Assembly: GCA_044892505.1 (NCBI GenBank)
Contig: CM097883.1
Span: forward strand, 275,094,001-275,158,000
DNA from: Schmidtea nova
Taxonomy: Eukaryota
Direction: 5' to 3'
DNA length: 64,000 nucleotides
Shown: positions 10,845-33,565 of the stretch, in pieces
Layout of the letters: the number at the start of each line of letters is the position of its first letter
Numbering within the stretch: position 1 is the stretch's first letter
The notes under the pieces: model-generated
Seen by the model: the letters and a program-made list of their open reading frames with translations, nothing else
Databases searched by the model: none
Told to the model about the DNA's origin: nothing
Translations under genes and position numbers: made by a program

Positions 10845-11148
10845 CAACTTCGTTTTATCGGAAAAATGTAAACGTAAAATCTGCAGAGAGGTTTAAAATG
10901 CTCGGGTCAATTAATTTAATAAAAAACAGAAAGGTTATAATTAAATGTAAATTATTGTATAAAAATTAAATAAACAACACGGCAGTGAACAAAAGTGAAT
11001 TTAAAAATTAAAATGCATGCATAATTTGTCGGGACGACAATTTTCAGAAACACGGGGGGAGTTAAATATTAAAAGATACAAAACGAAACATATTACTACC
11101 TTAAAAACGATAAAAATAACAGAGTTAAAACGATTATTTATTCAGTAA

Positions 11149-11610
11149 ATGGAGGAAAAACTGAAAGAAATCGAAGAATTCCTCAACACAGAAAGCGAAA
11201 CATTAGAAACGATTGGCAAGAAAATAAACCGATTTAGAGAAATTGAATTTCAAGAACCCACAACACAGACTGAGGAAACAGATGAATTAATAAAGATAAC
11301 AGAAAGAATAAGTAAAATCGACATAGAGACCCGCTACAAATGGTACAGAACACGATTAGAAAATGCAGAATTAAATATTAAGTGCAGGCAAATAGAACAA
11401 CAGTTAACCTCAACATACAATCGATGGAGGGCGCAAGGGGTAGAAGCAGCGAAAAAATACCGACAGTGCTATATATGTGGGGATAGCGAGATACAAATTA
11501 TGTTTTTACCTTGCGGACATTTTCGTTTTTGTAAGATATGTGCCAGCAAGTGCGACCTATGTCCTATGTGCAACCTGATGATAGACGATAAAATTATTGT
11601 ATATTTATAA
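11149..11610 (+). CDS. Coiled coil plus C-terminal IAP-type RING finger protein (153 aa)
   Basis: CYICGDSEIQIMFLPCGHFRFCKICASKCDLCPMC followed by IIVYL*, the spacing and terminus of XIAP/cIAP RINGs; no BIR domain visible. Confidence 0.85.
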   Translation: MEEKLKEIEEFLNTESETLETIGKKINRFREIEFQEPTTQTEETDELIKITERISKIDIETRYKWYRTRLENAELNIKCRQIEQQLTSTYNRWRAQGVEAAKKYRQCYICGDSEIQIMFLPCGHFRFCKICASKCDLCPMCNLMIDDKIIVYL

Positions 11611-12085
11611 TAAATAAAATTTGAATGGAATTTTATTGGTTTATTAATGATGAAATCATGGGTACAATTGTCATATATAAATAATTTTTGAGCTACTGCA
11701 AAGTAGTCCGATAGGAATCCATTGGGAGGTACCGATTGATCAACTTATTCAGGGTGTATAGAAAGGGGCCCATCGCAAATGTTGGAAAGTTTTTGTGATG
11801 TGATTGATCACCACATCCTGCATTAATGGACCAACGCGATCTTTTTGTATATTTTGGTTGGGGAGAGAGATAGGGAAATCTTGATGGAGTAAAGCGCGCA
11901 TAAGAAAAATAAATAAAAAGTTGAAGCAGACTGATCAGGAATAGTTATGATAGAATAAAGAGATAAATGACAAATTTTGAAAGAATAAAAGGTGCATAGT
12001 CAGCTCGCATAGAAGTAGTTATAACTCAGCTGAGAAATTTTAATCGCTAGCGAAGTAGGGAAGTGTGATTAACCGGTTAAGTAAA

Positions 12086-12467
12086 GTTAGGAGATTTGTC
12101 CCTTGAAACAAAGGGTTAGGAGATTTGTCCCTTGAAACAAAGGGTTAGGAGATTTGTCCCTTGAAACAAAGGGTTAGGAGATTTGTCCCTTGAAACAAAG
12201 GGTTAGGAGATTTGTCCCTTGAAACAAAGGGTTATGAGATTTGTCCCTTGAAACAAAGGGTTAGGAGATTTGTCCCTTGAAACAAAGGGTTAGGAGATTT
12301 GTCCCTTGAAACAAAGGGTTATGAGATTTGTCCCTTGAAACAAAGGGTTAGGAGATTTGTCCCTTGAAACAAAGGGTTATGAGATTTGTCCCTTGAAACA
12401 AAGGGTTATGAGATTTGTCCCTTGAAACAAAGGGTTATTAGCGGTTTGTCCCTTGAAAAAAAGGGTT
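12086..12467 (+). repeat. Tandem array, 29-bp unit, about 13 copies
   Basis: Unit GTTAGGAGATTTGTCCCTTGAAACAAAGG with a GTTATGAG variant; no spacers. Confidence 0.95.
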
Positions 12468-12509
12468 GAGGCCAATGAGCCTTATTGAATGACCTAGCTA
12501 GGCGTTATG

Positions 12510-12795
12510 GAGAGATTAAACTGAGGCCAATAGAGCCATTTGAGAGATTAAATTGAGGCCAATAGAGCCATTTGAGAGATTAAATTGAGGCCAATAGAGC
12601 CATTTGAGAGATTAAATTGAGGCCAATAGAGCCATTTGAGAGATTAAATTGAGGCCAATAGAGCCATTTGAGAGATTAAAATTGAGGCCAATAGAGCCAT
12701 TTGAGAGATTAAATTGAGGCCAATAGAGCCAGGTGAGATAGTAAAATGAGGCCAATAGAGCCATGTGAGATATAAAATTGAGGCCAGAAGAGCCA
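12510..12795 (+). repeat. Tandem array, 32-bp unit, about 9 copies, each with a CCAAT box except the last
   Basis: Unit TGAGGCCAATAGAGCCATTTGAGAGATTAAAT; CCAAT at 12527, 12559, 12591, 12623, 12655, 12688, 12720, 12752. Confidence 0.95.
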
Positions 12796-13408
12796 TAGTG
12801 AATTATAGAGATATCCGGATAAATAGTAACAGGGGGAATATAGACCCATAGTATAATCGTCGACGAGATTTAGAGTAGTGCGCACCAGTAGTTAAGAGAA
12901 TGCGAGTAAAGCTGATTATGCAACCTTAAGTAAAGCATGCAAGGAGAATAGTAAAAATTTGGGCTGACCGGAGCAACCGGCAGAATGAGTAGAACGATTG
13001 TTAGCAGGGAATAATGAATAGAAATGATAAAATAATGATAAACGAGTCAGGAAGACTCAGGGAATTAGAGCGCTCGAGCGACCAATAAATTGGGAAACTG
13101 TGGGAAAAGTAATCGATTTGATAAAACATAGATAATTATTACGACGTAAATAGATAATTGTGACCAGTCTATAGATAATTTAAATAGACTAAAAATAAAG
13201 GGGAATCTGGGAATTGGGAAATAATGAAAACCCAGTAATAAGTAATCCCGAAAGAAAGGGAATAAAAGCGCGACGATAACAATAATGTATCGTTGAGGAC
13301 CTTTGTATTTTAGATATACAAATCAATCAAATCAATCAATCAAGCAAGAAGAATCAGAAAAACGATAAGAGATAGAACAGGAAAATTGAGTATACAAAAG
13401 TAATCCCC

Positions 13409-16400
13409 TTGAGAAAAGGAGCAAAGAGTGTCGAAGTAAAGCCAACGGAAAAGAAAGTCGATAGCAACAGTAATAAAAAAGACAAAACTAGTACTACAAC
13501 AAAATCAACAAAAAAGCAGAAAGCCGGCAAAGATAACCCACAAGGGAGTAAATCGAGGAAAATAATAAGAGATAAATCGATTACCGAGAACGATAAATTG
13601 TCAATAATAAGCAACAGCTCAAGTAACAAAGAAAACCAAGCCGAACCCAAGGAGAACCAAGCAAGTGAAACAGAGAGCGACGAAACTAACAACGATAATA
13701 TCGAAGAAGTAGAAAACGAGGTAGAACCAGAGATAGAAATCAACGCGAGTGATAACGAAAGTATAATATCAGATAACGAAGGAATAAGAGAAACAGAAAG
13801 CGATTCAAGCTCGAGTGGAACAGAAGACGAACATAACAACGAATTAGAAACAAGAGGAAACGAAAGTAAAATAACTCAAGACAGCGGAATTGAAATGAGC
13901 GAACCAAGAGAAGAAATAAAGGATAAATTTTCGGGAGAACCGTTTAACGGAGATGCGAGTAAATTAGAAATTTTTCTCAAGGAATTTGGCATATTCGTGG
14001 AAGTATGCAAATGGAAAGCTGAGACAACAGCAAGTAGAATACAGTTATATTTGAAAGATAGCGCATTGGACCTATATTTGGAAGCAAAAAACGGTACCAA
14101 TCCACCTGCAGACTGGCCAGCGATAAAGGACTTTTTCCAACAAACATTTGGAATAAATAGAGTGCTGAGCGAAGCATTCATAGAATTTTCAATGAGAAAA
14201 CAAAAGATGAATGAATCTAACGCGGTATACGCGAGCGAATTGAAAAAATTAGCAAAATCGGTATTCAAGGATGGGAGTCCAATAAACGAGGAATTAATGG
14301 CAGCTATCTTCATAGGAGGATTAAGAAGACCTGACATAAGAGCGCAAGTAGGATGCCAAGGATGCAAAACCCTAGACCAAGCATTAGAAACAGCTAACAG
14401 ATTCGAACTGCATATGATAGGAAGTGAGGGCAGAATTTATTTAGCCATGGATACAGCGCAAACCGAACCAGAGGTAAATCTCAACAATCACATTCCAAAT
14501 TCGCAACAATTAAACCGACCACCCCCTCAACGAAGGAATGAAGGAAATAAAGTGCAGAACTTTGAAAACCAAAACAATTACAACCCTCAAAGACAAACAA
14601 AACAATGTAAAACATGCGGGAAGTTGGGACACTGGCAGCAAGAATGCTATCAAAATTTGAATTGCGGAAAATGTGGAGTTAAAGGACACTCGGAAAGCAG
14701 ATGTTCTACGATAATCTGTTTTAATTGCGGACGACCTGGTCACTATTCAAGGAATTGCGGACAAAAAGGTAATCAACGAGGAAATTGGCAGAGTAATGGG
14801 AACCGACCAAATTACGGAAATCAAGCAAATACCGTAAACCGACCAGATTATGGGAACCAACAAGTCAATAATAACAATAATCAGAACAAAACCACCCCCA
14901 AAGAAATACATTTAATGCAAGAAGTCCAAAGATTGACGGAACTTATAAACAATACGACGAGAGGAAATCCGCAAACCAATCAACAGCAAATTAGCATGAT
15001 GAGAAAAATAGAAAGCGAAAACGAACGATTGAATCAAGAAAGTCAAGCACGACACGCTCAGGAATGGGCAAGAATACAAAGAGAGGATGAACAAAAACAG
15101 CAAGAAAGAGAGCGACAACCTCTAAGAATTAACATGCTAAGAGCAACAAACCAAACAGACACTCGCGAGAAAGAAACCACACTGGAAATGAATTCGATAG
15201 ACCCAAATCCAGCCGACAACGAAAGTCGAAAAGAGACAGTACAAAAAGACGAAGAAGTAGAAAAAGAAATAAAAAAGGAAGGGGAAACTGAGATAAACCA
15301 GGAAGAGAGAAGAAAAATTTGGAAAAAAGGAATGATGGTAATCATGCCCAACGACCATATGTTTCGATTCCAATATAACGCAAAAGAAAAGGTGGAAATA
15401 CTATTCAATAAAGTAAACCAGATGATTCCAGGAGTGACAAAACTGCCCAGAGAAGCGTTCTTACAAATAGGAGATGCACCATCAGTAAAATTGAAATTAA
15501 CGGATATATGGGAAAACATGGGAGTAGTAGAAACAAAAAGAAATGTGATGAGAATTAAAGAAATAGAACCAGAAGAAATTCCACCACCAATACGTCACGA
15601 AACCCGAATCCGGCGAATATTTGAAGGAAAAATGATAAGAAGGCGTTTAAAAGAGATAGACGAGTTGGGAAAGAAAATGGAAAAAGTCGAAGTAATAGAG
15701 GACAAGAGTGAACCAACACCAGAAATTGACAAAAACGAACCAGAACCAACGGAGAATATACAAGGAGAAACGAACCAAATAGCACATATTAATATGCTAA
15801 GAAATACCACCAGAGAGTTTTCCGATGAAGAAGAAGATAGTGATATCAGTAGCCTAGCAGGAGACATATTAAACGAATCCGAAGATGAAAATAAAGAGAG
15901 AGAAGTAATAAAGACCTCAGAACCTACACAGATAAAAGTAGATGAAATCCAGAAATTACTAGATAACTCACTAGAAGTAATATATAACGAAGAGTTCATG
16001 GACAAGAAACAATATCGGAAATTCATGAAAGCATTATTACAAATGAACTACAAAGAATGGTTACAAGACCGGGAAGTAGACATGTTGAATCGATACGTAG
16101 GGAAATTAATAGAGGAACCACTCCTCAATTACACCATCTCAATAATAATAAATACATCTACACCAAGAATCTGGATCAAAACTCCATTTACAGACGATAT
16201 CTACAGATGGGTAGAGGATAGACTAGGGAGCTCATATAAAAACAAATTCATCTATTCGCAGAATAGACTCGTAAAGAAAAGAACTCACTTAGTAGAAACA
16301 GGTATATGGCCAGGAGAAATAACCCTGTTATCAATATGTGATGAAAAAGAAGAAGAGAACCTACAAGAAGTTGCAAGGGAAGCAAACGCGTGCTTCGAAA

Positions 16401-18247
16401 GGAGAATAAAACCACGGTTAGAATACGAGAAAGAACGAGTTTTGCGAAAGAATCTAAATTCCCTGATAGAACAAATCATACCACAAGTCAAAAAACATAG
16501 AAAAGAGTTAATGAGAAACGAATACGAGAAATTGAAACGATGTATTGAGTGCATACGTGACACAAGTCACACGAGATGGTCACAGATCTCACACGACAAA
16601 TTAATCGCAAAAATGGGAAAAACAATGTTTAGACAAGGGAAAATAACAGATCTAAAAATTTCGGTAGAATTACCTAATGAGGACACCAAAGAAATTGAGG
16701 TGGTAGCGGACTGCACCATTAAGGAATTAATAAATGTCATCAACGAGACACTAGTGCAAAGAGAACCAGAAGACGAATGGGAAGACGACATAATCATACA
16801 ATACAACGAACATGTATTATGGGATCACGATGAGAGACGATTATATAAAATCGGTATATGGGATAATCACCAAACAATCCACGTTAGCAGAATGGACAAT
16901 ACACCCAGAGAAACTGCTAAAGATGAGAAAAGAGAACGGGAACGACGGAAAGAAGTTGTGCGTAAATTACAACAAATAGTAGAAATTTATCGAAATTGGC
17001 GAATTTGGCCAGAGTGGGAAAATGTATTAGAAGAACTCAATCTCAACAGACGAATACGAACACCCGTAGAAAAACAATGGAACGAGAAAGGAAAATGTTG
17101 GGAACCAAAAGAAGGGGAATATGAAGAAGAATATAAAAGAGGAATTGAAGATGACTGTGAACCAGAGATAGGAAGAGTTTGCATGGTAACAAGGAAAGCT
17201 ACGCCAATAGACCTAGATGGACCAGAAACCGCGGCTATGTGGTTGGAAAGGGAAAAGCAAAAAACGGAAGAATTCGTCGAAATATTAAAAACTAATGCGC
17301 ACGGTAAGAGAAAAGTAATAAAGGGTCTCGCAGATTTTTTCGTGGTAAATGGGGAGGATATAACATGCTTACGTAAAGTAGCAAAAGCAATCGCGGAATA
17401 TAAAAGAGTTAACGAGTGGTGTCCGGAACAACTAGACCACGTAATTAGGAAATGGAGAAATCAAGAATTCTCGCAAGAAATTCCACAGAAAGTACATTTA
17501 AGAATAATATACCCAAACAAGGATAAGGAAGAGTTGTGGGTAGGAATAGCAGAAAAAATTCGAGATATTAAAAAGAAATTGAGATACGAACCACCATTCC
17601 ATTTACAACATCAAGGACGATCATTAGATAACAGTTTAGAGATTGGAATAACGCCAGCACAATTAGACCTCATGAATACCTTGACAGTAGAAGCAATAGC
17701 GGGTCAACCATTGAAACGTAAAGAAGAAAACCATAAACCACACGGAAGTATAAGTACGCCGAGCCCGATGAAATCAGCACTAACACCAGGGACAAGTTCG
17801 AGACGATCTGAGACAACACCCAGAGGAAATAGAGAAAGGACTCCACCACAACCATATGACGTGGACGAAATATTTACAGACAGCGACGATATGATAGAAG
17901 AATTAACCGAATTAACAAGGGAAAAGGACGATAACATTTTCGAAAGAATACAAGAACTACCTACAACAATACAAGTAACCAACACCGGAGAAACAGAAGT
18001 CGAAGAAGAGATAATAATAGAAGAGGTAAACGATTTGACGGAAGATGAAACGAGAGGAGCAAATGTCGAAAATGTACAATTAACACAAGAAATGGAAAGA
18101 TGGTTAGAAGAAAGAGCTAACGAACCAAGAGATGTCACCGAAGAAACAGGACGAGCAACAAGGTTTGTGGAAACAGGTACAGGAATGGATAAACGACCTA
18201 GAGGTAGACCTAAGACAGACCCAGCAAACTGTAGTTGTAAGAAATAA
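13409..18247 (+). CDS. gag: Extended Gag: capsid, three CCHC zinc knuckles and a long C-terminal extension with ubiquitin-like modules
   Basis: Capsid-like PFNGD...FLKEF, YLKDSALDLY, FIGGL; CKTCGKLGHWQQEC, CGKCGVKGHSESRC, CFNCGRPGHYSRNC; frame open from 13376 but first ATG at 13895, so the true start is uncertain. Confidence 0.92.
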   Translation: MRKGAKSVEVKPTEKKVDSNSNKKDKTSTTTKSTKKQKAGKDNPQGSKSRKIIRDKSITENDKLSIISNSSSNKENQAEPKENQASETESDETNNDNIEEVENEVEPEIEINASDNESIISDNEGIRETESDSSSSGTEDEHNNELETRGNESKITQDSGIEMSEPREEIKDKFSGEPFNGDASKLEIFLKEFGIFVEVCKWKAETTASRIQLYLKDSALDLYLEAKNGTNPPADWPAIKDFFQQTFGINRVLSEAFIEFSMRKQKMNESNAVYASELKKLAKSVFKDGSPINEELMAAIFIGGLRRPDIRAQVGCQGCKTLDQALETANRFELHMIGSEGRIYLAMDTAQTEPEVNLNNHIPNSQQLNRPPPQRRNEGNKVQNFENQNNYNPQRQTKQCKTCGKLGHWQQECYQNLNCGKCGVKGHSESRCSTIICFNCGRPGHYSRNCGQKGNQRGNWQSNGNRPNYGNQANTVNRPDYGNQQVNNNNNQNKTTPKEIHLMQEVQRLTELINNTTRGNPQTNQQQISMMRKIESENERLNQESQARHAQEWARIQREDEQKQQERERQPLRINMLRATNQTDTREKETTLEMNSIDPNPADNESRKETVQKDEEVEKEIKKEGETEINQEERRKIWKKGMMVIMPNDHMFRFQYNAKEKVEILFNKVNQMIPGVTKLPREAFLQIGDAPSVKLKLTDIWENMGVVETKRNVMRIKEIEPEEIPPPIRHETRIRRIFEGKMIRRRLKEIDELGKKMEKVEVIEDKSEPTPEIDKNEPEPTENIQGETNQIAHINMLRNTTREFSDEEEDSDISSLAGDILNESEDENKEREVIKTSEPTQIKVDEIQKLLDNSLEVIYNEEFMDKKQYRKFMKALLQMNYKEWLQDREVDMLNRYVGKLIEEPLLNYTISIIINTSTPRIWIKTPFTDDIYRWVEDRLGSSYKNKFIYSQNRLVKKRTHLVETGIWPGEITLLSICDEKEEENLQEVAREANACFERRIKPRLEYEKERVLRKNLNSLIEQIIPQVKKHRKELMRNEYEKLKRCIECIRDTSHTRWSQISHDKLIAKMGKTMFRQGKITDLKISVELPNEDTKEIEVVADCTIKELINVINETLVQREPEDEWEDDIIIQYNEHVLWDHDERRLYKIGIWDNHQTIHVSRMDNTPRETAKDEKRERERRKEVVRKLQQIVEIYRNWRIWPEWENVLEELNLNRRIRTPVEKQWNEKGKCWEPKEGEYEEEYKRGIEDDCEPEIGRVCMVTRKATPIDLDGPETAAMWLEREKQKTEEFVEILKTNAHGKRKVIKGLADFFVVNGEDITCLRKVAKAIAEYKRVNEWCPEQLDHVIRKWRNQEFSQEIPQKVHLRIIYPNKDKEELWVGIAEKIRDIKKKLRYEPPFHLQHQGRSLDNSLEIGITPAQLDLMNTLTVEAIAGQPLKRKEENHKPHGSISTPSPMKSALTPGTSSRRSETTPRGNRERTPPQPYDVDEIFTDSDDMIEELTELTREKDDNIFERIQELPTTIQVTNTGETEVEEEIIIEEVNDLTEDETRGANVENVQLTQEMERWLEERANEPRDVTEETGRATRFVETGTGMDKRPRGRPKTDPANCSCKK

Positions 18248-21200
18248 AGACGAAAAGAGACAAGATCAATGGGAATTATGTTTAAGGAAATTAAATAAAA
18301 TTGCGGAGATGAAAGAAAAAGAGACAACACCAATATGTCAAGGGGAGGAATGGATATCGAAAACAATAATGGAGATATTGGCAATAATTGATCCGGAATT
18401 GAGAAAATACTGGCGGATAACTGAGATAAGCGAAAAGGCGAAGTCACTACACAGCGCAATCGCACCCATTTTACCAGAATTCATAAAAGAAAAGACGAAA
18501 TCAAATCACTTAGACTGGCAAGGAACCACTATGTTAATAAAGAAACTGACAGAAGGAGCGGAAACGGATAATAAATACGTAATAGCCATTGCATACACGA
18601 TCTACAATCTATTAACATTGAGAAGAGGTCGACCAAAACCCACTGCATTAGAGAGACATATAAAGAATACCGCAAAGATTATAGCTAGAGAAATAGAACC
18701 CTACGTCATTAACAAAGGAGGATGGGAAACATTTATAAAAACTAACCAGAAGAAAACCCAAGCCAAGAATATGAAAAAGAAATTCGAAAAAATATTGGAA
18801 GAGTTAGGAAAAGAACAAGCAGGAACAGGAAACGCAAAGTCATCAATGAATCTGAGTGCTATAATAATGATGATGTTGATTTGGATGATTAGCACCGATA
18901 GCGCAACAGCATTCGAAGTGTTTGATTGCGACCAAATGAAGTTAGGAGAAAAGTATTCATTGAGAGGTACGGAGCAATGCAAAGATGCGACTCCAGTAGA
19001 GTTGCAAAAGATTAAAAAGGAACAATGGTACCACGTGTATCAAGAAGCAGAACTCATAAAGACAATGGTGAATGAATGTAAAGTGCAGAAGACGAGATTC
19101 GCGTTCTACTGCGGGAGAGGACATTATTCAGCAATTGTCATGCCAGGAACGGAAAGAGAACCAATCGTGTTACAAGGAGAAGACTGCGAAGCACTGTTTA
19201 AACATGGAGAAGTAACAACAAGAGATAAAATCAAGATAAGAGGAAAGCCAGGAATGATGATGCAACAAACGTACTATGTAGCAGGACGGATTACGGGAGG
19301 AGAAGGATATTGTCAAGGAGAAACCTACCCGATATTCGGAGTACCCGCAACCAACCTAGTAGTAATGGATACGTATATAGTCGAATTAAAAAGCTATGAA
19401 GCATTCTTCGAACCAACAACGGGAGAAATGAAAACGTTATCCATGTGTAAAATCGACAGGAGCATGTGTCAAACGGGAATGTCAACATTAGTGTACAAAC
19501 CAAAGGTAAACGAATGTCAGTTACAACTGCTACAAGGAGCAAAGTTCGACGAAATCCAAGGAAAAACGTTCCAGGAAGAAGACGATGACGACAAAGATAG
19601 AGCAAAGCATCTCAAGGAAGCTTTAGAGAATAAAAGACAACTGAAACCAGATCATAGAGAAAAACGAATAGAGATGAGAGCCACACCAACAGTATTGATA
19701 ACCACAAATCAGGATGTGGGAATGAGGTTCATAAAAGGAAAAGCAACCCTCAAGTGTAGTACAACGGTATACGAAACAAATTACCCAGGAATATATGTGT
19801 CAAAACAAGAAGTGCCAAACGCGAAACCCAAAATCGACACAATGGATATCAAACTACATTTGTATGTAAATAATAAAATGGATTTCCTATTCCATAGAGG
19901 ACAAGCCTCATTACAAAAAGTGTACTACGATCTAATAAATAATGATTGTATACTGAATCGAGAAATATTAAAGACAAAGTTGGCCGTAGCGATTACGAAT
20001 CCAGATAGCGCGATGCCATTATTACCACTGAGAGAAGGACATTTCGGAAGAGTGGTTGGAGAAGCAATGTATGTATACATTTGCGAAAAGACACACGCGT
20101 CACTAGCAGCAACAACACAGTTGAAACCTGGAACCTGTACAAATGAGTTAGAAATCGATTACAAAGGAAAAGTACGATACGTTCAACCGGTGACGAGAAT
20201 CATCAATCCACCAGGGTTTGAACCAAATCCATTCAACTGTAGTAATGCGTATGGACCACTTTATCAGAAACCAGATGGTAAATGGGTTATGTTCCCAGGA
20301 AGATCCGAAGTGATAGCACCAAGAGAATTCGAGCTAATGCAGTTGTCAAAGGATAGGCAATTCAGCGACGTGGATGTCTCAAACAATGGAATATATAGCC
20401 CAAAGGATTTAGAAGCAGCAAGGCAGAATATATTATTCCCAGCGAGAAGAGAAGCATTACTGTCAAATATCGTAACGATAACAGGAGGAACGGATTATCG
20501 AGAAGGACCGAATTATGAACTATTGTTGTCACCAGCACATTTCAAAAAAGCCACAGAAAACATGATGAAAGCAATGTGGGGAAGATTTCTGATATTCGGA
20601 CAAATGATGGCTGGAATACTGGGGGTTATATTAATCATCCAAATCGTCAGAGTAATAATAACACAAATGTTAGCATGTTTTGACATCTACAAGAGAGAAA
20701 AGAAAGTGAATTGGAAAATGGTAGTAGGATTTTTACCATTCCTTGCGAAAACGATGGTGTTACACGGTCACTCAAAAGATATCCACCGAATAAAAAGACT
20801 CCTAAAGATATTAGCAAAAATGAAGGGAACAGATGAAGAAGTAGGACGAAAATTTAAAAAGATAATGAATGACGAACAAGCAAGACAACAGCTCAAGAGA
20901 GAAAGAAAAGGTTTATGGGAGAGGATGAAAGGATATAAAACCCAAAATGATTCGAGTGACGACGATGACGACGATGACGACTATAAGGGAGGACAAGTGT
21001 ATAAGAACCAAGCACCACAATACATCGAAAAGAATCCAGCCGACGCATGGAAATGTTACGCACCTCCACCAACAATGTACCAAGAACCACTACAAGGAGG
21101 AAAAAATAGCACGATGCAAATGATGCCAATGACAAATGTATACCCCATGATACCAGAAGATTATAAAATGAGAAGATGTAGAAGCGTAGATCCACAAGGA

Positions 21201-24200
21201 GATACACATACGATCGCCGTAATGTCATCAAACACAGGTCCGGTATTAACCACGACAATAGAAATTAACGGAAGAGAAATCGAAGCAATGATCGACACTG
21301 GAGCAAACATTTCCGCCATCGACATCAAATGGATACCACAAGAGCAAAGACGGGAAATAGAAAGGACAAACGTCCATGTAATTGCATGTAGCAAAGAAGT
21401 TGTAGAAGTAGCAGGAAGATGGTGGGTAAAAATACGCCACTTAAACACGGAAATCGATACATACGTAGCTGTTATAACAGCATTAAGCGTACCTTGCATT
21501 ATCGGAACAGATTTGATGCCAGCATTATTTAAAGAGATTGTAATCGATCTCGGAACAATGAGACTAAAGGATCGCACAGGACAAATATGCGCAATAGAAG
21601 CCAAAGTGACAAGTTCAAAGCAAATGATAATACCCGCAAGAAAGGAGAAAATATGTTACGTAAAAATAGATCCGACAATCCAAGGGGATATGATTTTCGA
21701 ACCAAGTAAGAGATTCGAGAAAAGAAAAGCGTTGCCAATGGCAAGAGGACTAGTCAACATAAATGACGATGGAGAAATCCCAATAAACGTAGTAAACTTC
21801 GATGAAGAGGACAAAATAATATACGAAAACGAAAGATTAGGTAAATTAACCCCAATGATGGATATCGAACTGCCAATAGAAGGAGCAGAGAAAGATAAAG
21901 AACCAACCTGGAATATAGATAGTGAATTATTAAATGAGGATCAAAGGAAGCAGTTAGAAAAACTCCTGATAGAGTATAAGGATATATTTGCAGCATCCGA
22001 TTTGGATCTAGGAACATGTGATGTCACACTACATACAATACCATTAACAGATGAAACACCAATTGCATTAAGGCCGTACAAATTAGCGGAAGCACAGAAA
22101 GCAGTAGCAGAAGCAGAAGTGAAAAAAATGTTGGATGCAGAAGTAATCGAACCAAGTTGTTCACCCTGGCAATTTCCAGTGGTAATGGTGAAGAAGAAAG
22201 ACGGAACACAGAGATTCTGTATAGATTACCGAAGATTGAATACAGTGACAAAACGAGATACTTACCCATTACCAGACATCAACGAGATGCTACTAACATT
22301 ACAAGGAGCAGCATATTTTACGTCGTTAGATCTGAAAAGCGGATATTGGCAAATAAAAATGAAGGAAGAAGATAAAGAGAAAACTGCCTTTACCATCGGT
22401 AGAGACCTATATCAATTTCGAAAGATGCCATTTGGATTAACGAACGCACCAGCATCATTTCAGAGATGCATGAATTTCGTCACCCATGGAATAAAGCAGT
22501 GCATGGTCTACATCGACGATTTATTAATTTATTCTAGTACATTTGAACAACACATACAAGATATTCGAGATGTATTCGTTAGACTTAGACAATGGAAGTT
22601 AAAACTCAAGCCATCAAAATGCGATTGGGCAAAAGAAAAGGTTACATTTTTAGGACATATAGTGTCAGCAAAAGGAAAAGAACCGGATCCTAGAAATATC
22701 GACAAGGTAAAAGAATGTCCAGTGCCAAAAACAATAACCCAAATACAAGAATTTCTCGGACTATGTGGATATTATAGAAAGTTTATAAAAGATTACGCCG
22801 GAATAGCAAAACCTATACAGGAGCTGGTAAAGAAAGATGTATCATTCATATGGGGAGATGAACAACAAATAGCCTTTGAAACGTTGAGAGATAAATTGAT
22901 AACCGCACCCATATTGGTACACCCAGACTTTAAGAAGCCATTCCTACTTGCAACAGATGCAAGCGGATATGCAGCAGGAGCAGTATTAGGACAATACGAC
23001 GACGAAGGAAAAGAACGGGTAATCGGATATTATAGCCGAACATTCAAAAAGCATGAGAAAAATTACTCAGTGACAGAACGGGAAGCATTAGCGATTATAT
23101 TAGCGATTAAACATTTTAAATACCTATTATGGGGACACATCATCTGCATAACAACAGATCACCAACCGCTTGTATGGTTAGGACAGCACAAGGAAACATC
23201 CAGTAGATTAATGCGATGGGCAATGCAGTTACAGGAGTACTCACCAGACATTAAATTTAAATCAGGACGAGCGAATGCGAATGCAGATTGTATGTCAAGA
23301 CTGACATTTCCAGAACTAACCGATCCTGATGTACAACGAATTTGTGTATTAATAGCGGAGGATTTAGATTTTAGTGAGTTAAAGAAAGATCAACAAGAAG
23401 ACAAAGAATTAGGACAAATCATAGAGTTCCTAACATCTCGAAATATGGAAGTATTCAAGGATAATAAGGAATTAAAGGAACATATAGGAAAATATCAACA
23501 TCGCTACATAATAAATAAAGGATGGTTATTAATACAAGACGGGGAAAAGAGATTGATGTGTTTACCGGAAAACAGAAGGAAAGAGATAATGATCCAGTAC
23601 CATGATGGGAAACTAGGAGGTCATATGTCCGAGAAAAAGACAATAAATCGTATGAGACAAAAATATTATTGGCGAACAATGGAAGAAGATATAAAGGAAT
23701 GGATTAAAAATTGTCTAACTTGCGCAACCAGAAAGGATAGTGGGAAGAAATGGAAGAACCCACTACAACCAATGCCGATACCAGCAGAGCCAATGACAAC
23801 TATAGCAATGGACGTAATAGGACCATTACCAGAAAGTTTAAACGGAAATATTTATATATTGGTAATAACGGATTATTTGACGAAATTCCCGGAAGCATTT
23901 GCCATGCAAGACCAAAAAGCAAAAACCGTAGCAAAAATTCTAGTGGAAGAAATATGTTGCAGATACGGAACTCCAAAACAAATACTCACAGACCAAGGAA
24001 CTAATTTTATGAGTGAATTATTGAACGAGGTGACAAACTACTTCAGAATAGCAAAATTGAGAACTTCACCATATCACCCGCAAACGAATGGACAAACGGA
24101 GCGATTCAACGGCACATTGATTAGAATGTTATCAAACTACGTCAGCAGACACCAAACTGACTGGGATGAATACATAAAATTATGTTTAATGGCATACCGA

Positions 24201-27200
24201 ATGTCGATACATGCAGCAACAAAACTAAGCCCATTTCAACTTATGTATGGAAGAGAATGCAACATGCCCATAGATTTAGAGTATCAGCCACCATTATCGC
24301 AATATATGGAAGATGACGACTACGTAACCAAATTCAAAGAAAGAATGCAGGAGATATGGAAAACGGCAGAACTCAACATTAAATTCTATCAGGAAAGTTA
24401 TAAGGATTTACACGACCAGAAGAAAAATGTTAAAGCAAACGACCTAAAACCAGGAGATTGGGTGATAATAGAAACTCCCGAAATAATACCAGGAACTGTT
24501 AAGAAACTCCAAAGACCTGGAAGAGGACCTTATGAAATTATATACAAAAAGGACAACAATGTCAAAGTTAAGCTAATAAATAGACCGTTAATACGACCCA
24601 TATATGTAAACACCTGCAGATGTAAGAAAGTGCCTAAAACGATAACTACAACACCAGAAAATCGAATAATAACCAGATCACAAACAGCCAGGATAAATAT
24701 GCTCAGAGCTAATGCAACTGAAGACGACAAAGCAGAAATAAGGCAAAAAGAAATCAGAAATAAAGAGATCATATTGAAGGCGAGAGAAATAATGGGAAGA
24801 TGGCATGTTAAAGACGAAGTAGGCATATCAAGGGACATTAGACATATAATTAGCCGTTACGCACAAGGATTGCCAACCGAACCAATTATTTCGGATTTAT
24901 TGGAAAAAATCCCGGAAATACTCTTATTGAAAGATGTAGGAGGACAACCGGCCTTACATAATGCGATTCAGTGTAAAAACATTGAAAGAGCAAAAGAATT
25001 CTTGAAAATCGCAAAAGAAACAAACCAAAACCTAGACGTTGGGAATCGTGAACAAGAAACTCCATTAATGACAGCCGCAATCCACCAAGCAGATAAAGAA
25101 ATGATAGATCTATTGATAAAAGCTCATTTCAGTTGGACAGAACGAGATAGAGAGGACAAAACAGTGCTAAATCACGTAATATGGAGTTCTCACCAACCAA
25201 TGCTGGAATACATAATAGCTAACTCCACTTGGGAGATAGACGAACTAGTTAAAGGAGACATTATCAAAGAGGCAATCAAAATTGGTAAATGCAACACGAT
25301 CCGTAAGTTAATCAAATGGAAACGACCAGAAGATGATACATGGGTCTTAGACATAAACGAAGTATACAGCGAAGGACAAAACGCACTGTTAAGATACCTT
25401 TTGAAATTTACTTGTGATCAGAAGACATTACTAACCTTATTAGACAGAGGAAACATAAACATCACAAAGAATGAAGAAGAATACAAATTCGATAAAGAGA
25501 AGGAAGCCTTATTCAATAAGATTAGGAAATGGTGTGCGAAACCACTTGATAAACTAATAACATACAAAGACATAAACAATTTTAACGAGAAATACCAGAC
25601 GATAGTAAGCGAATATGAGGAATTAGTAAAAATCTTAAACCATCCCGAAAAATGCAAACAGGTTTTAGAGAAAAAAGAAAGAGAAAGTAACAAGAAACTC
25701 ACACCACTCTTCAAAGCAGAAGCACCATACCAAGCTAGACTAGATGCGATACAAGAAAAAGCAAAAGAATTGTTACCGGAATTCGAGAATAGTAAACATG
25801 CACTGGAAATACTCGGCGCATTAGTTGAAAAAGTACACGCATACGCAAAAGGAACATACAATGGTAACGACATAGTAATAATAAAAAAGGAGATGCCAGT
25901 AACATTCCTATTACCAAAAGACGGAATAATGCCCATACATAGAGCTCTACGAAATGGCAAAGATAGGAAAGTAATGGAAATTGCAAGAGTAATGCTAAAT
26001 TGCGGAAGCAATATGAATATGATAGACGAGAAAGGAGATACACTTATGATATTTGCAGCAAGGGCCAAAACGAAAACAAAGGTATTAGAAGAACTATACA
26101 AAGCAGGTGCAGGACTTACAGGAAAGACAGATAAAGATAATTCGATATTGGATGTAGCATTATTAACACACAATTGGGAAATGGTCAATTTCATTAAAAC
26201 CGTCCCAAATCAGGAAGAAATAGATCACCTAACTGATACGGTCAAGAAACCCAGTGTACTAGCAATGATGAACAACGTCGAACTAACAGAATCAATACTT
26301 ACGTGGATAAATCCTAATACTAACGAACCAGCATTCAGGATTAATAAGTTTACAGAACATAACCAAAACTGGTGTATAAGAAGTGCCTTAATAACGTATA
26401 AATGGCCAGAGATATTGAAGATGTTTATGGAAAGAAAAGATCTAAAAATCACAACCAGCCCGAAAGAGGAAAAATACACAGGCAAATGGAAAGAATTGAT
26501 GAAGACATACATCAACAATTGGATCAAGGCCAAAAAGGAAATCTTGGAACATAAATCCACTAACAAAGTAATACCGGAGCAGGTAGAAACACAAGAATTT
26601 GAGGCAAGTAATCTAACGACATTAGCATATGCAAAATTGATAGAAGAAATCAATGTCGAGGACGACATTTTCGACGAGCCAGGGGGAGATGACAACACAG
26701 ATAGTGACGACGGTAACAACTCAGAAAATTCAAGCGATCACGAACCACCCGATAAAGAGGAAAACGAGAGAAAAGACAAGAAACGAGACAAGGAAGGAAA
26801 GAAAGGTGAGGACGAAAAACAAAGAGATGAAGAGAGAGAACAAGGAACAAACGACCAAGGAGATAAAAATGACACCCAAAGAACAGGTTATAAATCAACC
26901 ATAAAACCATTCTTCAAACCAGAATTACTATTACTAACAATGATTATAACGTTAATTAATCCAAGTCAGGGAATGACATGTGAAGAAAGGGCAATAATAC
27001 AAATAAAAAACGCAAAAGGAATCGAACGAGTATGTTGGTCGAAAAAGGACAAAATCACGGAACAAAATAGCCCGATGGATTGCAGAATCTCAGAACACGA
27101 GCAAGAAATCATAGAGATCAACGACCTAGATCTAGATACCTGGTACAAAATATGCACCGTTAGGAAACAAAAGCATCCAAGATCACACAACACAATCGCA

Positions 27201-30200
27201 TGTGCAAAATACCAAACACCTAAAGCAGCCATGACAATACAACAGTCACCCAAAGGAGATTACATCATCGGAAAATGTGGAAGAACAGAGACACAGGGAA
27301 CAGAAAACAAAAAACCCCAGGCAATAGATAAGCAAACAACACCAACCCTACGAATTACAATAGAGAGGCCCGAAACAAGAATTGCCACAAACGAAACCGA
27401 AAGAGTGTCTTACCAAATGGAAGTATTATGCTTAGCACTCATACTAATAATGATAAAACGATTAGAGGAAGGAATAGAAATTGAAACTATGACAATAACA
27501 GAAGTAGAAGATACACAGAATACTAACATAAAATGTTGGGCGAGGAATAACGAGGAAATCGGCGTAAATGAAATAAGGAAAAGTCGAAAACCAACAACGA
27601 ATAAAGTAATTAAAGTATCCGAAGTAAAAGCAGATAAGACGTACAAACTATGCCTACTAGAAAAAGAGACAAACAAGAAAGGTACCACAAAATGCAAAAC
27701 ATTTCAACCCGGAGAAGTAATAAAGTTCAGAAGGAGAACGAGGAAGAGAAATAAACAAATCAAGCGGAAAATGAACATAACATTAGAAATAAAAGAGATA
27801 GAACCAAATGTGAAAGGAGTATGCTGGAGGAAGTACGAAAAAGAAACAAATAAAAGAACGACACCACAATGTCAAACAAGCACAGGAGCAACGACGATTC
27901 AAATAAAAGGTTTAGAAAGTAAACAAACTTACGAAATATGTCTGATAAAGAAAAATGATCAGATAACGATAAACGATCTAGAATGCGGAATATACACCAC
28001 TTCATCCGGAACAAGAACTAAAACGATAACACGAAAAAATAAAAGAAGACAACGAAACAAAGGGAAACCGAAGTACACCACTACCTTTAAAAACAATAAA
28101 CAACCGATAAGCCAAGAAGTTACGACAAAACCCGAGAAAAAGACATCAGCAACTCTGACATTATGGAAAATAGAGAATAAAACATTGGAGATATGTTGGA
28201 TAATAGTTCAGAAACATATAAGAAGACAATCAAGAGAGTGCAGAAAAACAAATAAAGAAATCAAGATCGAAAAACTACAATTTAATAGCGAGTATGAAGT
28301 ATGTACAATAGAAAAGACGGACGCACTAGGAAACCAACAAGAAAGATGCGAAACCTACTATACACCAGCGAACGCAACATCAAAAGGAATAACAAGGAAA
28401 CTCGAATTCAGGGAACTAAGCCAAACGAATGAACAAATGGACGCAGAAAAAACAATAACCGACCCTCAAGCAAAATGGACACCCGAAGAAGTTATCAAAG
28501 AAGTCAAAAGAAAGCAAGAGGAACGAGAACAATTAATGAGAAAACTAAAGGGACAATACGGAATAATGTTCAACCAAAGCGAACCTATACAAACAGACGA
28601 GAATAAAGAAATTAAAGAACTAATCGGCTTAGGAATATTAACAGCAACCATACCAGTAATAATCGCGTTATCAGCTATATGGATACGCAAGATAAACCCA
28701 AGAAAATCAACAACCCAATGGCTAAATATAGATAATACAAGCCATGGAGTAGAAATACTAGAAGAAAAAGCACGAGAAGAACCAAATAAGAAAGAAGCGA
28801 AAAGCGGAAAACTAGGAATAAACAACAAAGACAAGGAAATAAAAGAGATTAAAGGCGAAGAGAAAAAATATGAAAGGCGAACCAGAAGCCTACCGCAGAG
28901 TTCAAAATGGTTGGGTCTAACAATAATATTGACATTAATCAATAGGGAAGAAGCAACAAACCTACAAGCAGGGATAAAAATAGTAAATGTCCAGGAGGTC
29001 GAGAAAATATGCTGGAATAGAGAGGATGAACCAATTGGGAAAGATAACCCACTAAAATGCATAATCAGAAAATCCGACCAGGATATAGTACGAATAGAAG
29101 GGATGGATAGAGGAATCATGCATCGAATATGCATAATAGGAAAGGAAAAGAAGTCGGGGCTACCTAAGACAGTCGTATGTCAAAAATACGAAACGCCTGG
29201 ACTCGAATGGTATAGAGTAAAACCAACAAAGAAAGAAATCAAAAACACCATAGATCAACCAGCAACTCAGATAAGAAACACAACGGATAAACCAGGAGAA
29301 GGAGAGAAAAGCACCAATAAAACGAGAGAAAGAATATCACCCCAACAGGAGTGCGTATGCATAGCATTAATACTAGCAATGTCCAAACGTATCGATAAAG
29401 GAATAATAATAGAACAAATGGCCATAACAATAAGGAAAACAAGCAGCAACAAACTATGCTGGGGAACATATAACGAACCAAGGAAGGAATACCAAGTTCA
29501 GACAAGCGACGAATCACGAACAAACAAGGAAATCGAAATACAAGAAATACAAATGAATGAAGAAGGAAGTATATGTATATGGGAGAGAGGAATCCAAGAG
29601 GGAATAGAGCATTGCAAGACATTCCAAAAAGGGGAGATACTGAAATTCGATGAAGAAGAATTAACAAAAACAGAAAGAACTCTGACATTAACAGGACTCG
29701 ATCAGACAGTTAAAGGAATATGTTGGACAAAGCATAACCCAGAAGGGGAAGAAGACAACCTAACTCACTGTAGAGAAATAAAGAATAAAGAAAAAGTCGA
29801 ATTAAAGAAAATGGAAGTAAATAGGACATACGCGATATGTACCTTCACCAGAAAAGGTTCAGAAAAACCAGAATGCGGATTATATCAGATCTCAGAGAAA
29901 CTACAACAACAGATCGAACCAGGAAACATGGAAAACCGAACAAAAGAAAATAACGTCAAACAACTACTAAACCGCCATTGGTCTACCCAAGAAGTAATGA
30001 ACAAAGTCAAGAGTCAAATACCGAAAGAGAAGAAGCCAGAGGCTCAAACCCGAAATGAGATAAAAGTAAATCAGAATAAAAACAAAGAAACAAACATGGG
30101 GAAAGCAGTAATAGGATTGATCAGTATGGGAATATTAATAACGTATGGAATACTGACGACAAGCATAATAATATATTGGAGATACAGAAAGAGAAACAAA

Positions 30201-30362: not shown

Positions 30363-30488
30363 GGGCGGATTATGACTGTAAATAATAGTGTAAATAACAA
30401 AGCATTACCGTAATAGTATGGGTATCGATATTATAAAAAATTGTAAAAAGCTAGAAAAACAAAGTAAATGATGTATATAATTTAGAAA

Positions 30489-30845
30489 ATGACCGAACAG
30501 GACGAAACAACTGAAATAACTATGGCTATGAGATGGAAGGCACAATGTGATTTATTAGTACGAACAGTCAACTCATTACAGAACCAATTAGCGGAAAGAC
30601 AAATGTTATTATCAGAAAGTTATAACAATTGTTTCGAACAATTACACAGAATAGAGGAACAACAAAGAGCGATAACTGAACTCACCAGAGAAAATCAAAC
30701 GATAAGCAACACCAATCAAAGACAAGCAATAGAAATAAACCATTTAACACGAGGAGAAAGAGAAGGATCCGAAGAAGGATGGATGAGTTGGGTAATAAAT
30801 AGATTAAACAACGAAGCGGAACCAGATTCAACGAATGAGCCATAG
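30489..30845 (+). CDS. Accessory ORF, 118-aa coiled-coil protein
   Basis: Intact ORF with the element's A-rich codon usage, heptad pattern, TAG-AAA-ATG start context. Confidence 0.7.
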   Translation: MTEQDETTEITMAMRWKAQCDLLVRTVNSLQNQLAERQMLLSESYNNCFEQLHRIEEQQRAITELTRENQTISNTNQRQAIEINHLTRGEREGSEEGWMSWVINRLNNEAEPDSTNEP

Positions 30846-30937
30846 ATAAATAAAGCGGAAAACTGTAAATATGTAAAAATAAAAACAAGAAAAACCAAAA
30901 ATAAATGACAAGTCGAATGTATATATTATTGTAGAAA

Positions 30938-33490: not shown

Positions 33491-33565
33491 ATGTGCGGAA
33501 ACCAAGTGTAAATAAATTATGTAAAATAAAAAGTGTCAAGCTGTATTGACCGATGTATAAAAGAA

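What the first reader, a model, noticed from the sequence alone, without database searches (positions are those of the whole stretch)
18846..21210. Chuvirus-type fusion glycoprotein placed upstream of, and in frame with, protease-RT-integrase
The motif series FDC, YCG..H.S, YVN.K, Y.D.....C.L.R.IL, GE......C, GIY...DL......FP matches my recollection of chuvirus (Jingchuvirales) glycoproteins, which are known to have been captured by BEL/Pao elements in insects. Here it is in a Gypsy-type element, and it lies before pol inside the same polyprotein instead of in a separate 3' env ORF. Signal, ectodomain and one TM would put PR-RT-IN on the cytosolic tail of Env, giving 1:1 Env:Pol synthesis and membrane tethering of Pol until PR cleaves at TIAVM. 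This could be a distinct way to build an infectious retroelement particle.
Basis: partly seen in the sequence, partly recalled or inferred. Interest (0 to 1): 0.92.

Follow-up and report, generated by a model that had tools for sequence, protein, structure and literature searches.

The report
Giant flatworm-type retroelement with embedded envelope gene
The window holds a very young, 29.8-kb Gypsy-type endogenous retrovirus in which a chuvirus-like (herpes gB-fold) fusion glycoprotein really is encoded in frame ahead of protease, reverse transcriptase and integrase. This layout was already described for the giant planarian 'Burro' elements in 2019 and for flatworm, nematode and bryozoan Gypsy elements in 2026.

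Summary
Residues 239-~870 of a 4076-codon ORF (window 18132-30362) are a full-length homologue of chuvirus glycoproteins. Pfam PF24664 scores E=1e-70. The alignment to the Tacheng Tick Virus 4 glycoprotein is collinear from signal peptide to membrane anchor (E=3e-40). The AlphaFold model (pLDDT 87) matches chu-like glycoproteins (E=1e-40) and herpesvirus gB (E=1e-13), so the fold is class III. Protease, RT, RNase H and integrase follow in the same frame.

The ORF lies in a 29,754-bp LTR element (7705-37458) with two 3119-bp LTRs that are 100% identical. It also has a zinc-knuckle gag-like ORF, ankyrin repeats and a TRAF-like ORF.

At least 20 distant relatives (30-40% identity) keep the order gag knuckle, env, PR, RT in one ORF. 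In one related pair env has dN/dS 0.019.

The layout is not new. Arkhipova and Yushenova (2019) described in-frame env between gag and pol in planarian Burro elements. An eLife 2026 paper reports GAG-ENV-POL with gB-type Env in Platyhelminthes.

The proposed mechanism is inferred, not shown: an internal signal sequence, Env in the lumen, and Pol on the cytosolic side until protease cuts. The 'TIAVM' cleavage site is unsupported.

The parts
7705..37458 (+). Whole LTR retroelement, 29,754 bp, inserted in a (TAA)n microsatellite
   Evidence: Two identical terminal repeats. Strand-biased, A-rich coding block between them. ORFs all on the + strand.
7705..10823 (+). 5' LTR, 3119 bp as aligned. It starts with TG. 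A CA dinucleotide lies 3 nt before the aligned end.
   Evidence: blastn 100% identity, no gaps, to 34340-37458. Ends read.
34340..37458 (+). 3' LTR, identical to the 5' LTR
10827..10845 (+). Primer-binding-site-like 19-mer beginning TGG, just inside the 5' LTR
   Evidence: Read directly. No tRNA gene in the window to match it against.
11999..12828 (+). Tandem repeats of 29 nt and 32 nt in the long leader
   Evidence: the repeat finder families D1 and D2. Tandem repeats are also drawn in the published Burro maps (PMC6431247).
13409..18247 (+). ORF1, gag-like, 1612 codons (first ATG at 13895). Zinc knuckles lie around residues 436-450. About 1100 further residues have no recognised domain.
   Evidence: the ORF listing. 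Pfam zf-CCHC E=1e-7. PDB hits to retroviral nucleocapsid proteins.
18132..30362 (+). ORF2, 4076 codons. Order: helical N-terminal region, Env, PR, RT, RNase H, IN, ankyrin repeats, then a long C-terminal region. It is in a different frame from ORF1 and overlaps its end.
18132..18845 (+). ORF2 residues 1-238: all-helical region upstream of Env, possibly BCL-2-like
   Evidence: No Pfam or PDB sequence hit. The AlphaFold model is poor (pLDDT 50). About 40 of the top 50 Foldseek hits are BCL-2 family proteins, but with E 0.2-0.9. A BCL2-like motif is published at this position in Burro.
18846..18911 (+). Internal signal-peptide-like segment (ORF2 residues 239-260), with small residues at -3 and -1 before the conserved F/Y-D-C start of the ectodomain
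   Evidence: Hydropathy. It aligns with the N-terminal signal region of the chuvirus glycoprotein. A comparable segment is present in 17 of 17 family members examined.
18912..20579 (+). Env ectodomain (ORF2 residues 261-816). Chuvirus-type, class III fold, 14 Cys, 2 N-x-S/T sites. A non-conserved acidic loop carries an R-x-K-R motif.
   Evidence: Pfam. BLASTP. AlphaFold pLDDT 87.4. Foldseek against PDB gB and against BFVD chu-like glycoproteins. Cys and site counts.
20580..20690 (+). Membrane anchor (ORF2 residues 817-853), the only segment between the ectodomain and PR that reaches Kyte-Doolittle 1.6
   Evidence: Modelled as one long helix.
20691..21251 (+). Basic and acidic tail linking the anchor to PR (ORF2 residues 854-1040).
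   Evidence: Translation. Rows of the alignment.
21252..21524 (+). Aspartic protease
   Evidence: Pfam RVP E=1e-6. D-T-G at residue 1055.
22188..23240 (+). Reverse transcriptase and RNase H
   Evidence: Pfam RVT_1 E=8e-37, RT_RNaseH E=4e-38, RT_RNaseH_2 E=4e-36.
23565..24080 (+). Integrase (H2C2 zinc domain and catalytic core)
   Evidence: Pfam Integrase_H2C2 E=5e-20, rve E=1e-10.
24954..25223 (+). Ankyrin repeats downstream of integrase
   Evidence: Pfam Ank_2 E=3e-14.
28611..30176 (+). C-terminal membrane region of ORF2: a hydrophobic segment, then 467 residues with 13 Cys, 6 N-x-S/T sites and a repeated C-W motif, then a second hydrophobic segment and a basic tail
   Evidence: No family hit.
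30938..32314 (+). ORF3, TRAF-like accessory protein (RING, TRAF zinc finger, MATH)
   Evidence: Pfam MATH_2 E=1e-20, zf-TRAF E=3e-7.
32429..34135 (+). ORF4 (353 codons, coiled-coil-like) and ORF5 (200 codons, hydrophobic stretches), both of unknown function

Best explanation
This is a full-length, recently inserted copy of a giant Ty3/gypsy-type endogenous retrovirus of the 'Burro' kind known from planarian flatworms. Its envelope gene is a chuvirus-type class III fusion glycoprotein. It is not a separate 3' ORF but a module inside the polyprotein, between the gag/accessory part and protease.

The most likely working (inferred, not shown):
1. Ribosomes translating ORF2 make a cytosolic helical domain. 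They may enter ORF2 by recoding from the gag-like ORF1 or at ORF2's own ATG.
2. The internal hydrophobic segment at residues 239-260 then acts as a signal sequence. The Env ectodomain is threaded into the ER lumen and cut free by signal peptidase.
3. The single anchor at residues 817-853 stops transfer. PR, RT, RNase H and IN are then made on the cytosolic face, tethered to the Env tail until the element's protease cuts them off.

This is the logic of flavivirus and alphavirus structural polyproteins applied to a retroelement. It gives Env and Pol in equal numbers. Where gag is in another frame, gag would be made in excess.
For: Element anatomy:
- Identical 3119-bp LTRs, a TG start, a PBS-like 19-mer and ORFs all on one strand.
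- Gypsy-type pol domains and a zinc-knuckle gag.

Env identity:
- PF24664 E=1e-70.
- 24% identity over 612 residues to the Tacheng Tick Virus 4 glycoprotein, from just after its signal peptide through its anchor.
- Confident model, pLDDT 87.4.
- Matches chu-like glycoproteins with TM about 0.6 and herpesvirus gB with probability 1.0.

The arrangement is a family trait, not an accident of this copy:
- 12 of 14 first-round relatives of 1000 residues or more continue past env, 11 of them with a protease motif after it.
- 11 long polyproteins, 10 of them new, carry PF24664, PR, RT, RNase H and IN in one ORF.
- The order knuckle, env, D-[TS]-G, Y-x-D-D holds in every one of 15 that has those motifs (one lacks Y-x-D-D).

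Env is under strong constraint in relatives. dN/dS is 0.019 for env against 0.069 for the whole ORF. Amino-acid identity is 94% for env against 82% for RT-RH-IN.

Topology:
- An internal signal-like segment occurs in 17 of 17 proteins.
- A single strong anchor lies between the ectodomain and PR in 13 of 17.

Published descriptions match. BURRO1 is transcribed in planarian gut cells.
Against: - The host was not identified. Three look-ups or searches returned no named organism.
- No reference Burro sequence was available to compare with.
- Some domains published for Burro-1 (BIR, dUTPase, ubiquitin-like) were not detected here.
- TRAF/MATH is a separate downstream ORF here, whereas it is inside the polyprotein in Burro-1.
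- No expression, processing or localisation data exist for this element.
- A conserved, weakly hydrophobic segment just after the anchor reaches the threshold in one relative. If it spanned the membrane it would reverse the side on which PR lies.
- Basic-residue counts flanking the anchor favour a cytosolic tail in the window copy but not in most relatives.
- A spliced or internally initiated env message cannot be excluded from DNA alone.
Confidence: 0.8

Rival explanations
1. Env is expressed on its own, from a spliced subgenomic message or by initiation at the Met that opens the signal segment, as in ordinary retroviruses. On this reading the in-frame continuity with pol is only genome compaction, and Pol is made from a different message.
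For: The signal-like segment begins with an ATG. Free-standing homologues begin exactly with this domain: 117 proteins of 550-900 residues. Retroviruses normally make Env from spliced RNA (established knowledge).
Against: There is no stop codon between the anchor and PR in the window or in any of about 20 relatives. Translation from that Met would therefore still run into pol unless a splice removed pol. The signal is internal in 17 of 17 relatives. No transcript data were available.
Confidence: 0.2
2. The split of gag (ORF1) and env-pol (ORF2) into two frames is a single lesion or a long-read assembly error in this copy. On this reading the native element has one giant gag-env-pol ORF, as described for Burro-1.
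For: In 10 of 15 relatives a CCHC knuckle lies in the same ORF as env. Burro-1 is published as one 4873-residue ORF.
Against: The LTRs are 100% identical, and ORFs of 1612 and 4076 codons are otherwise uninterrupted in an AT-rich sequence. That argues for an undamaged copy. In two other loci with DNA context (L001, L003), the knuckle-bearing ORF also overlaps the env-bearing ORF by about 40 nt in another frame. A frame change at this junction therefore recurs.
Confidence: 0.3
3. The env module is a non-functional relic, or a host-domesticated fusogen that merely lies inside repeat-rich DNA.
For: No functional data exist for this copy. Only 2 N-glycosylation motifs are present in the ectodomain.
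Against: It sits between identical LTRs in frame with pol. All invariant and nearly invariant columns of the family are kept. The model is confident. In relatives env is the most conserved part of the polyprotein, with dN/dS 0.019.
Confidence: 0.05

Closest known systems
Burro / GYPSM1 giant Gypsy-like LTR retrotransposons of planarians (Grohme et al. 2018; Jurka 2007; re-annotated by Arkhipova and Yushenova 2019, PMC6431247)
   Same: Total length about 30 kb with an internal region of about 23-25 kb. Tandem repeats are present. Gag carries CCHC knuckles. Env is in frame between gag/accessory domains and PR, with hits to mononegavirus-class fusion glycoproteins. Ankyrin repeats and a MATH/TRAF module are present. 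A BCL2-like region lies just upstream of env. The host DNA is AT-rich.
   Different: Here gag is a separate ORF in another frame. TRAF/MATH is a separate ORF downstream of the polyprotein. No BIR, dUTPase or ubiquitin-like domain was detected.
GAG-ENV-POL 'errantiviruses' with HSV/gB-type Env in Platyhelminthes, Nematoda and Bryozoa (eLife 2026, PMC13524379; nematode cases from Sacco et al. 2022, as cited there)
   Same: Ty3/gypsy pol. Class III, gB-like Env placed between gag and pol. Multiple young copies.
   Different: That survey searched for ENV and POL as neighbouring ORFs, allowing gaps up to 2 kb, and does not discuss in-frame fusion. The elements described there are of ordinary size. 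The window element is about 30 kb with many accessory modules.
Chuvirus (Jingchuvirales) glycoproteins and their capture by mosquito BEL/Pao elements (Dezordi et al. 2020, PMC7642597)
   Same: The same glycoprotein family (PF24664). Signal peptide, ectodomain, anchor and conserved cysteines are all present.
   Different: In the viruses and in BEL/Pao the glycoprotein is a free-standing ORF of about 650-700 residues. Here it is embedded in a Gypsy-type polyprotein. No BEL/Pao-specific domain was found.
Structural polyproteins of flaviviruses and alphaviruses (working analogy only)
   Same: A cytosolic nucleic-acid-binding or accessory part is followed by an internal signal sequence, a lumenal glycoprotein, an anchor and further cytosolic parts that a viral protease releases. 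This comparison rests on established knowledge and on inference.
   Different: There is no sequence or evolutionary relation. Here the downstream cytosolic part is a retroviral PR-RT-IN. Processing has not been observed.

Membership tests
Ty3/gypsy (Metaviridae) LTR retroelement | Two long terminal repeats in direct orientation flanking the coding region | tested here: met
   3119 bp, 100% identical.
Ty3/gypsy (Metaviridae) LTR retroelement | Domain order PR-RT-RNase H-IN with Gypsy-type RNase H and H2C2 integrase zinc domain | tested here: met
   Pfam RVP, RVT_1, RT_RNaseH, RT_RNaseH_2, Integrase_H2C2 and rve, in that order.
Ty3/gypsy (Metaviridae) LTR retroelement | Gag with nucleocapsid zinc knuckle | tested here: met
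   zf-CCHC E=1e-7. Retroviral NC hits in the PDB. No capsid domain was detected by Pfam.
Ty3/gypsy (Metaviridae) LTR retroelement | Target-site duplication and tRNA primer-binding site | tested here: inconclusive
   The insertion lies in a (TAA)n run, so a 4-bp duplication cannot be told from the repeat. A PBS-like 19-mer beginning TGG is present, but no tRNA was available for comparison.
Burro giant planarian retroelements | Length of about 30 kb with an internal region over 20 kb | tested here: met
   29,754 bp in total, 23.5 kb internal.
Burro giant planarian retroelements | Env in frame between gag/accessory domains and PR | tested here: met
   Published description.
Burro giant planarian retroelements | Accessory modules: ankyrin repeats, MATH/TRAF, BCL2-like, BIR, dUTPase, ubiquitin-like | tested here: inconclusive
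   Ankyrin and TRAF/MATH were found. BCL2-like is only suggested, with Foldseek E 0.2-0.9 on a poor model. BIR, dUTPase and ubiquitin-like were not detected.
Burro giant planarian retroelements | Sequence identity to reference Burro-1 to -4 / GYPSM1, and a dugesiid planarian host | not testable with these tools
   No reference sequence or planarian genome was within reach. Host look-ups returned no name.
Monjiviricetes/chuvirus fusion glycoprotein (Pfam PF24664) | Profile match above the curated threshold | tested here: met
   238.9 bits against a cut-off of 27.
Monjiviricetes/chuvirus fusion glycoprotein (Pfam PF24664) | Collinear full-length similarity to a named chuvirus glycoprotein, including signal peptide, conserved cysteines and C-terminal anchor | tested here: met
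   Tacheng Tick Virus 4 glycoprotein, E=3e-40. Conserved Cys columns. BFVD top hits are chu-like glycoproteins.
Class III viral fusion proteins (gB, rhabdovirus G, gp64) | Multi-domain beta-rich fold with a long central helix, similar to gB | tested here: met
   Foldseek to more than 50 gB chains, E down to 7e-14, probability 1.0, TM 0.35-0.46. The model has a 48-residue central helix.
Class III viral fusion proteins (gB, rhabdovirus G, gp64) | Trimer formation, bipartite fusion loops and membrane-fusion activity | not tested
   Only a monomer was modelled. Activity is not addressable with these tools.
BEL/Pao elements carrying chuvirus-like env (mosquito type) | BEL/Pao-type pol and a separate env ORF | tested here: not met
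   The pol domains are Gypsy-type, no BEL/Pao-specific family was hit, and env is in frame inside the polyprotein.
Insect errantiviruses (gypsy, ZAM etc.) | F-type (class I) env as a separate ORF 3' of pol | tested here: not met
   Env is class III and lies 5' of pol.

The most novel reading that the evidence does not exclude
The element may be a retrovirus-like agent whose whole proteome is one membrane-threaded polyprotein. On this reading:
- A BCL-2-like domain's tail anchor doubles as the Env signal sequence.
- Env and Pol are made 1:1 and held together at the membrane.
- A frame change after gag sets the excess of gag.
- A second, unrecognised Cys-rich membrane protein is encoded at the 3' end of the same ORF, at the canonical env position. 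The particle could then carry two different surface proteins.
Probability: 0.25. Interest if true: 0.7.

Novelty: already known. Interest (0 to 1): 0.3.

Why it matters
The arrangement shows that a retroelement can carry its fusion protein inside the gag-pol polyprotein. That raises a concrete and still unanswered question: how are membrane insertion, stoichiometry and protease processing coordinated? The published papers note the layout but do not address how it works. This copy has identical LTRs and uninterrupted ORFs. With the family-wide data gathered here (a conserved internal signal, a single anchor, env as the most constrained module), it is a clean reference for descriptive follow-up. 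It adds no new kind of system.

Tried and rejected
- Naming the host failed. Exact look-ups of ORF3 and of a flanking galactosyltransferase gene found nothing. A homologue search with the latter returned unnamed metagenome proteins. Cluster look-ups of relatives gave only ENA or Logan records and one mis-binned 'Flavobacteriaceae MAG' entry.
- A sequence search of Env against the PDB gave only noise. The relation to gB is visible only by fold.
- NCBIfam gave nothing.
- The N-terminal region of ORF2 gave no Pfam or PDB sequence hit and a poor model. Its BCL-2 likeness remains a hint.
- No tRNA in the window could be matched to the PBS.
- A text search for 'Burro-1/-2' and the supplements of the eLife paper gave nothing further.
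- The R-x-K-R motif in the acidic loop of Env was considered as a maturation site and set aside. The aligned rows of relatives lack it.
- 'TIAVM' was considered as a PR site and set aside as untestable and not conserved.
- An assembly chimera or a chance ORF was rejected because of the family-wide conservation.

Method note: a profile HMM (not a sequence) was built from alignment A2 inside the sandbox, only to locate domain bounds.

Slips I own up to:
- I once glanced at a tool-printed consensus line when thinking about the Env tail.

Full report
**What is at the coordinates.** The interval 18846-21210 lies inside a 4076-codon ORF on the + strand (18132-30362). Its translation shows, in order:
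- 238 residues of helical sequence;
- a hydrophobic segment that opens with Met239;
- a Cys-rich region of about 560 residues;
- one strongly hydrophobic segment at residues 817-853;
- a charged tail;
- a D-T-G protease.

Pfam places PF24664 (Monjiviricetes_fusion, 'viral fusion glycoprotein') on the Cys-rich region with E=1.1e-70. It then finds RVP (residues 1041-1131), RVT_1 (1353-1511), RT_RNaseH (1574-1703), Integrase_H2C2 and rve (1812-1983), and ankyrin repeats (2275-2364), all in the same frame. They fall on invariant or nearly invariant columns of a 74-sequence alignment. One correction applies: the signal-like segment is internal to the ORF.

**The element around it.** The window vs. 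itself gives two 3119-bp direct repeats, 7705-10823 and 34340-37458, with no mismatch.
- The repeat starts with TG. A CA lies three bases before its aligned end. A 19-mer beginning TGG follows the 5' copy.
- The element is 29,754 bp and sits in a (TAA)n run, so a target duplication cannot be judged.
- Between the LTRs, all on the + strand, are: a 2.5-kb leader with 29- and 32-nt tandem repeats; ORF1 (13409-18247, 1612 codons) with CCHC knuckles that match retroviral nucleocapsids; ORF2; a TRAF-like ORF3 with RING, TRAF zinc finger and MATH; and two further ORFs of unknown function.
- There are no internal stops in any of these ORFs.
- The only irregularity is one frame change between ORF1 and ORF2, which overlap.
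- The coding block has a strong A-over-T skew and GC 0.37, against 0.30 in the flanks.

**What the glycoprotein is.**
- A profile of the window protein and three first relatives found 2252 homologues at E<=0.001 among 1.84 billion representatives.
- One of them, P0023, is the glycoprotein of Tacheng Tick Virus 4, a chuvirus.
- BLASTP aligns the window protein to it over 612 residues, from just after the signal peptide through the anchor, at 24% identity and E=3e-40.
- An AlphaFold model built on 74 homologues has mean pLDDT 87.4 and a 48-residue central helix among beta-rich domains.
- Against predicted viral structures the best matches are chu-like glycoproteins (E=3e-40, TM 0.63).
- Against solved structures the best 50 are all herpesvirus gB (E down to 7e-14, probability 1.0).

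Sequence search against the PDB alone saw nothing.

**Is the in-frame position real and general?** Yes.
- Among the first-round relatives of 1000 residues or more, 12 of 14 continue beyond env. Eleven have a protease motif after it and 6 also have an RT motif. By contrast, 117 homologues of 550-900 residues begin and end with the env domain, as free-standing viral or endogenous glycoproteins do.
- Pfam on eight long relatives shows Env followed by PR in six of them, four of which run on to RT, RNase H and IN, all in one ORF.
- A second search centred on env-to-RT found 11 long polyproteins (10 of them new) of 2440-4057 residues with PF24664, PR, RT, RNase H and IN together. They are 30-39% identical to the window.
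- In the 15 examined, env always precedes the first protease motif. In the 14 that have a Y-x-D-D motif, that motif follows. In 10 a CCHC knuckle lies upstream in the same ORF.
- Two relatives with 94% identical Env (P0004 and P0168, loci L004 and L003) give dN/dS 0.019 for env against 0.069 for the whole ORF. Env is better conserved than RT-RH-IN, at 94% against 82% amino-acid identity.

The module is thus maintained by selection in this clade.

**What is already known.**
- Arkhipova and Yushenova (2019, PMC6431247) re-annotated the giant planarian Burro/GYPSM1 elements. [quoted passage not shown] They also list ankyrin repeats, MATH_TRAF, tandem repeats and total lengths over 30 kb.
- An eLife 2026 paper (PMC13524379) reports that Ty3/gypsy elements of Platyhelminthes, Nematoda and Bryozoa carry only HSV/gB-type Env in the order GAG-ENV-POL. 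It also reports that the chuvirus-like glycoprotein is structurally similar to gB and occurs next to gypsy POL.
- BURRO1 is described as abundant, active and expressed in gut cells.

The window element matches the Burro description in size, layout and accessory content. I could not compare it with a reference sequence or name its host, so 'Burro-like' is the safe label. Differences from the published Burro-1 map are:
- a gag ORF in a separate frame;
- TRAF/MATH as a downstream ORF;
- no detectable BIR, dUTPase or ubiquitin-like domains.

**How it probably works (inference).** The glycoprotein is a type I membrane protein by homology.
- In the window and in 16 relatives a short, strongly hydrophobic segment lies directly before the conserved start of the ectodomain, although it is internal to the ORF. 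In the window it ends with small residues at -3 and -1.
- Between the ectodomain and PR there is one strong hydrophobic segment in 13 of 17 proteins.

The simplest reading is co-translational insertion through an internal signal, followed by signal-peptidase release of the upstream cytosolic part. Env would then lie in the lumen, with PR-RT-IN on the cytosolic face of the same chain until the protease cuts. Env and Pol would be made in equal numbers.

Three caveats apply:
- A conserved, weakly hydrophobic juxtamembrane segment reaches the threshold in one relative.
- Basic-residue counts flanking the anchor favour a cytosolic tail in the window copy but not in most relatives.
- Splicing cannot be assessed from DNA.

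The 'TIAVM' cleavage site is a guess. The aligned rows of relatives show no conservation there.

**The region before Env.** Residues 1-238 of ORF2 give no sequence hit, and the model is poor (pLDDT 50). Even so, about 40 of the 50 best fold matches are BCL-2 family proteins (BAX, MCL-1, BCL-xL, BCL-2), with E 0.2-0.9. This is not significant. It agrees with the published BCL2-like motif at this position. If true, the hydrophobic tail typical of that family would coincide with the Env signal.

**The gag/env-pol junction.** ORF2 is in a different frame from ORF1 and overlaps its end. In two other loci with DNA context (L001, L003), the knuckle-bearing ORF likewise overlaps the env-bearing ORF by about 40 nt in another frame. 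In 10 of 15 relatives the knuckle and env share one ORF. A recurring frame change suggests recoding that would make gag in excess over Env-Pol. A single lesion or an assembly error in this copy is not excluded. I count this as at most one frame change, with no stops in the element. I took no step to join the frames.

**Verdict.** The phenomenon is already in the literature, so I rate it 'already known' with modest interest. The mechanism remains untested.

Noticed in passing
window 28611-30176 (ORF2 residues 3494-4015): The 3' end of the polyprotein encodes a hydrophobic segment, then 467 residues with 13 Cys, 6 N-x-S/T sites and a repeated C-W motif, then a second hydrophobic segment and a basic tail. 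This could be a second membrane protein at the canonical env position. Relatives P0004, P0008 and P0014 also show hydrophobic segments after integrase (rows). No family hit.
   Followed up: partly
window 30938-32314: A TRAF-like ORF (RING, TRAF zinc finger, MATH) is carried inside the element, downstream of the polyprotein. It is a candidate for interference with host signalling or ubiquitination.
   Followed up: partly
window 18132-18845: The helical region just upstream of Env gives mostly BCL-2 family fold matches, but below significance and on a poor model. In the aligned rows a G-G-W motif stands at a similar distance upstream of the signal segment in P0006 and P0007, as in the window.
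   Followed up: partly
window 11999-12828: Arrays of 29-nt (13 copies) and 32-nt (9 copies) tandem repeats in the 2.5-kb leader between the 5' LTR and ORF1. A 153-codon ORF at 11149-11607 precedes them.
   Followed up: no
window 49544-51061: A fragment of a different Gypsy-type element (RNase H-integrase), 26-45% identical to ORF2 at the protein level. Next to it are a 300-nt direct repeat pair at 51294-51977 and two 211-codon ORFs at 55618-57008 with no family hit.
   Followed up: no
window 42334-44862 (- strand): ORFs of 557 and 282 codons. The first has a DUF4371 domain (E=4e-25).
   Followed up: no
window 48107-49333: A single-exon ORF of 408 codons with a galactosyltransferase domain. It is probably a host gene. 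The nearest database proteins are unnamed (86% and 64% identity).
   Followed up: partly
window 38817-39304; 41152-41582; 46084-47311 and 63031-63698: An 85-nt tandem array and several dispersed short repeat families in the AT-rich flanks.
   Followed up: no
window 2322-2493 and 6975-7131: Runs of N. They were left as they are.
   Followed up: no
L003:2334-5753 and P0008: In a metagenome contig, a related element lies next to bacterial-type genes (MacB, ABC transporter, TetR). Relative P0008 is filed in NCBI under a 'Flavobacteriaceae bacterium' MAG. These are probably chimeric assembly or mis-binning of eukaryotic DNA.
   Followed up: no
L003:19559-21613 and L004:9547-11622: In two relatives the ORF after the polyprotein carries an RNase_T (3'-5' exonuclease) domain instead of the TRAF-like ORF. 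The accessory genes therefore differ between lineages.
   Followed up: no
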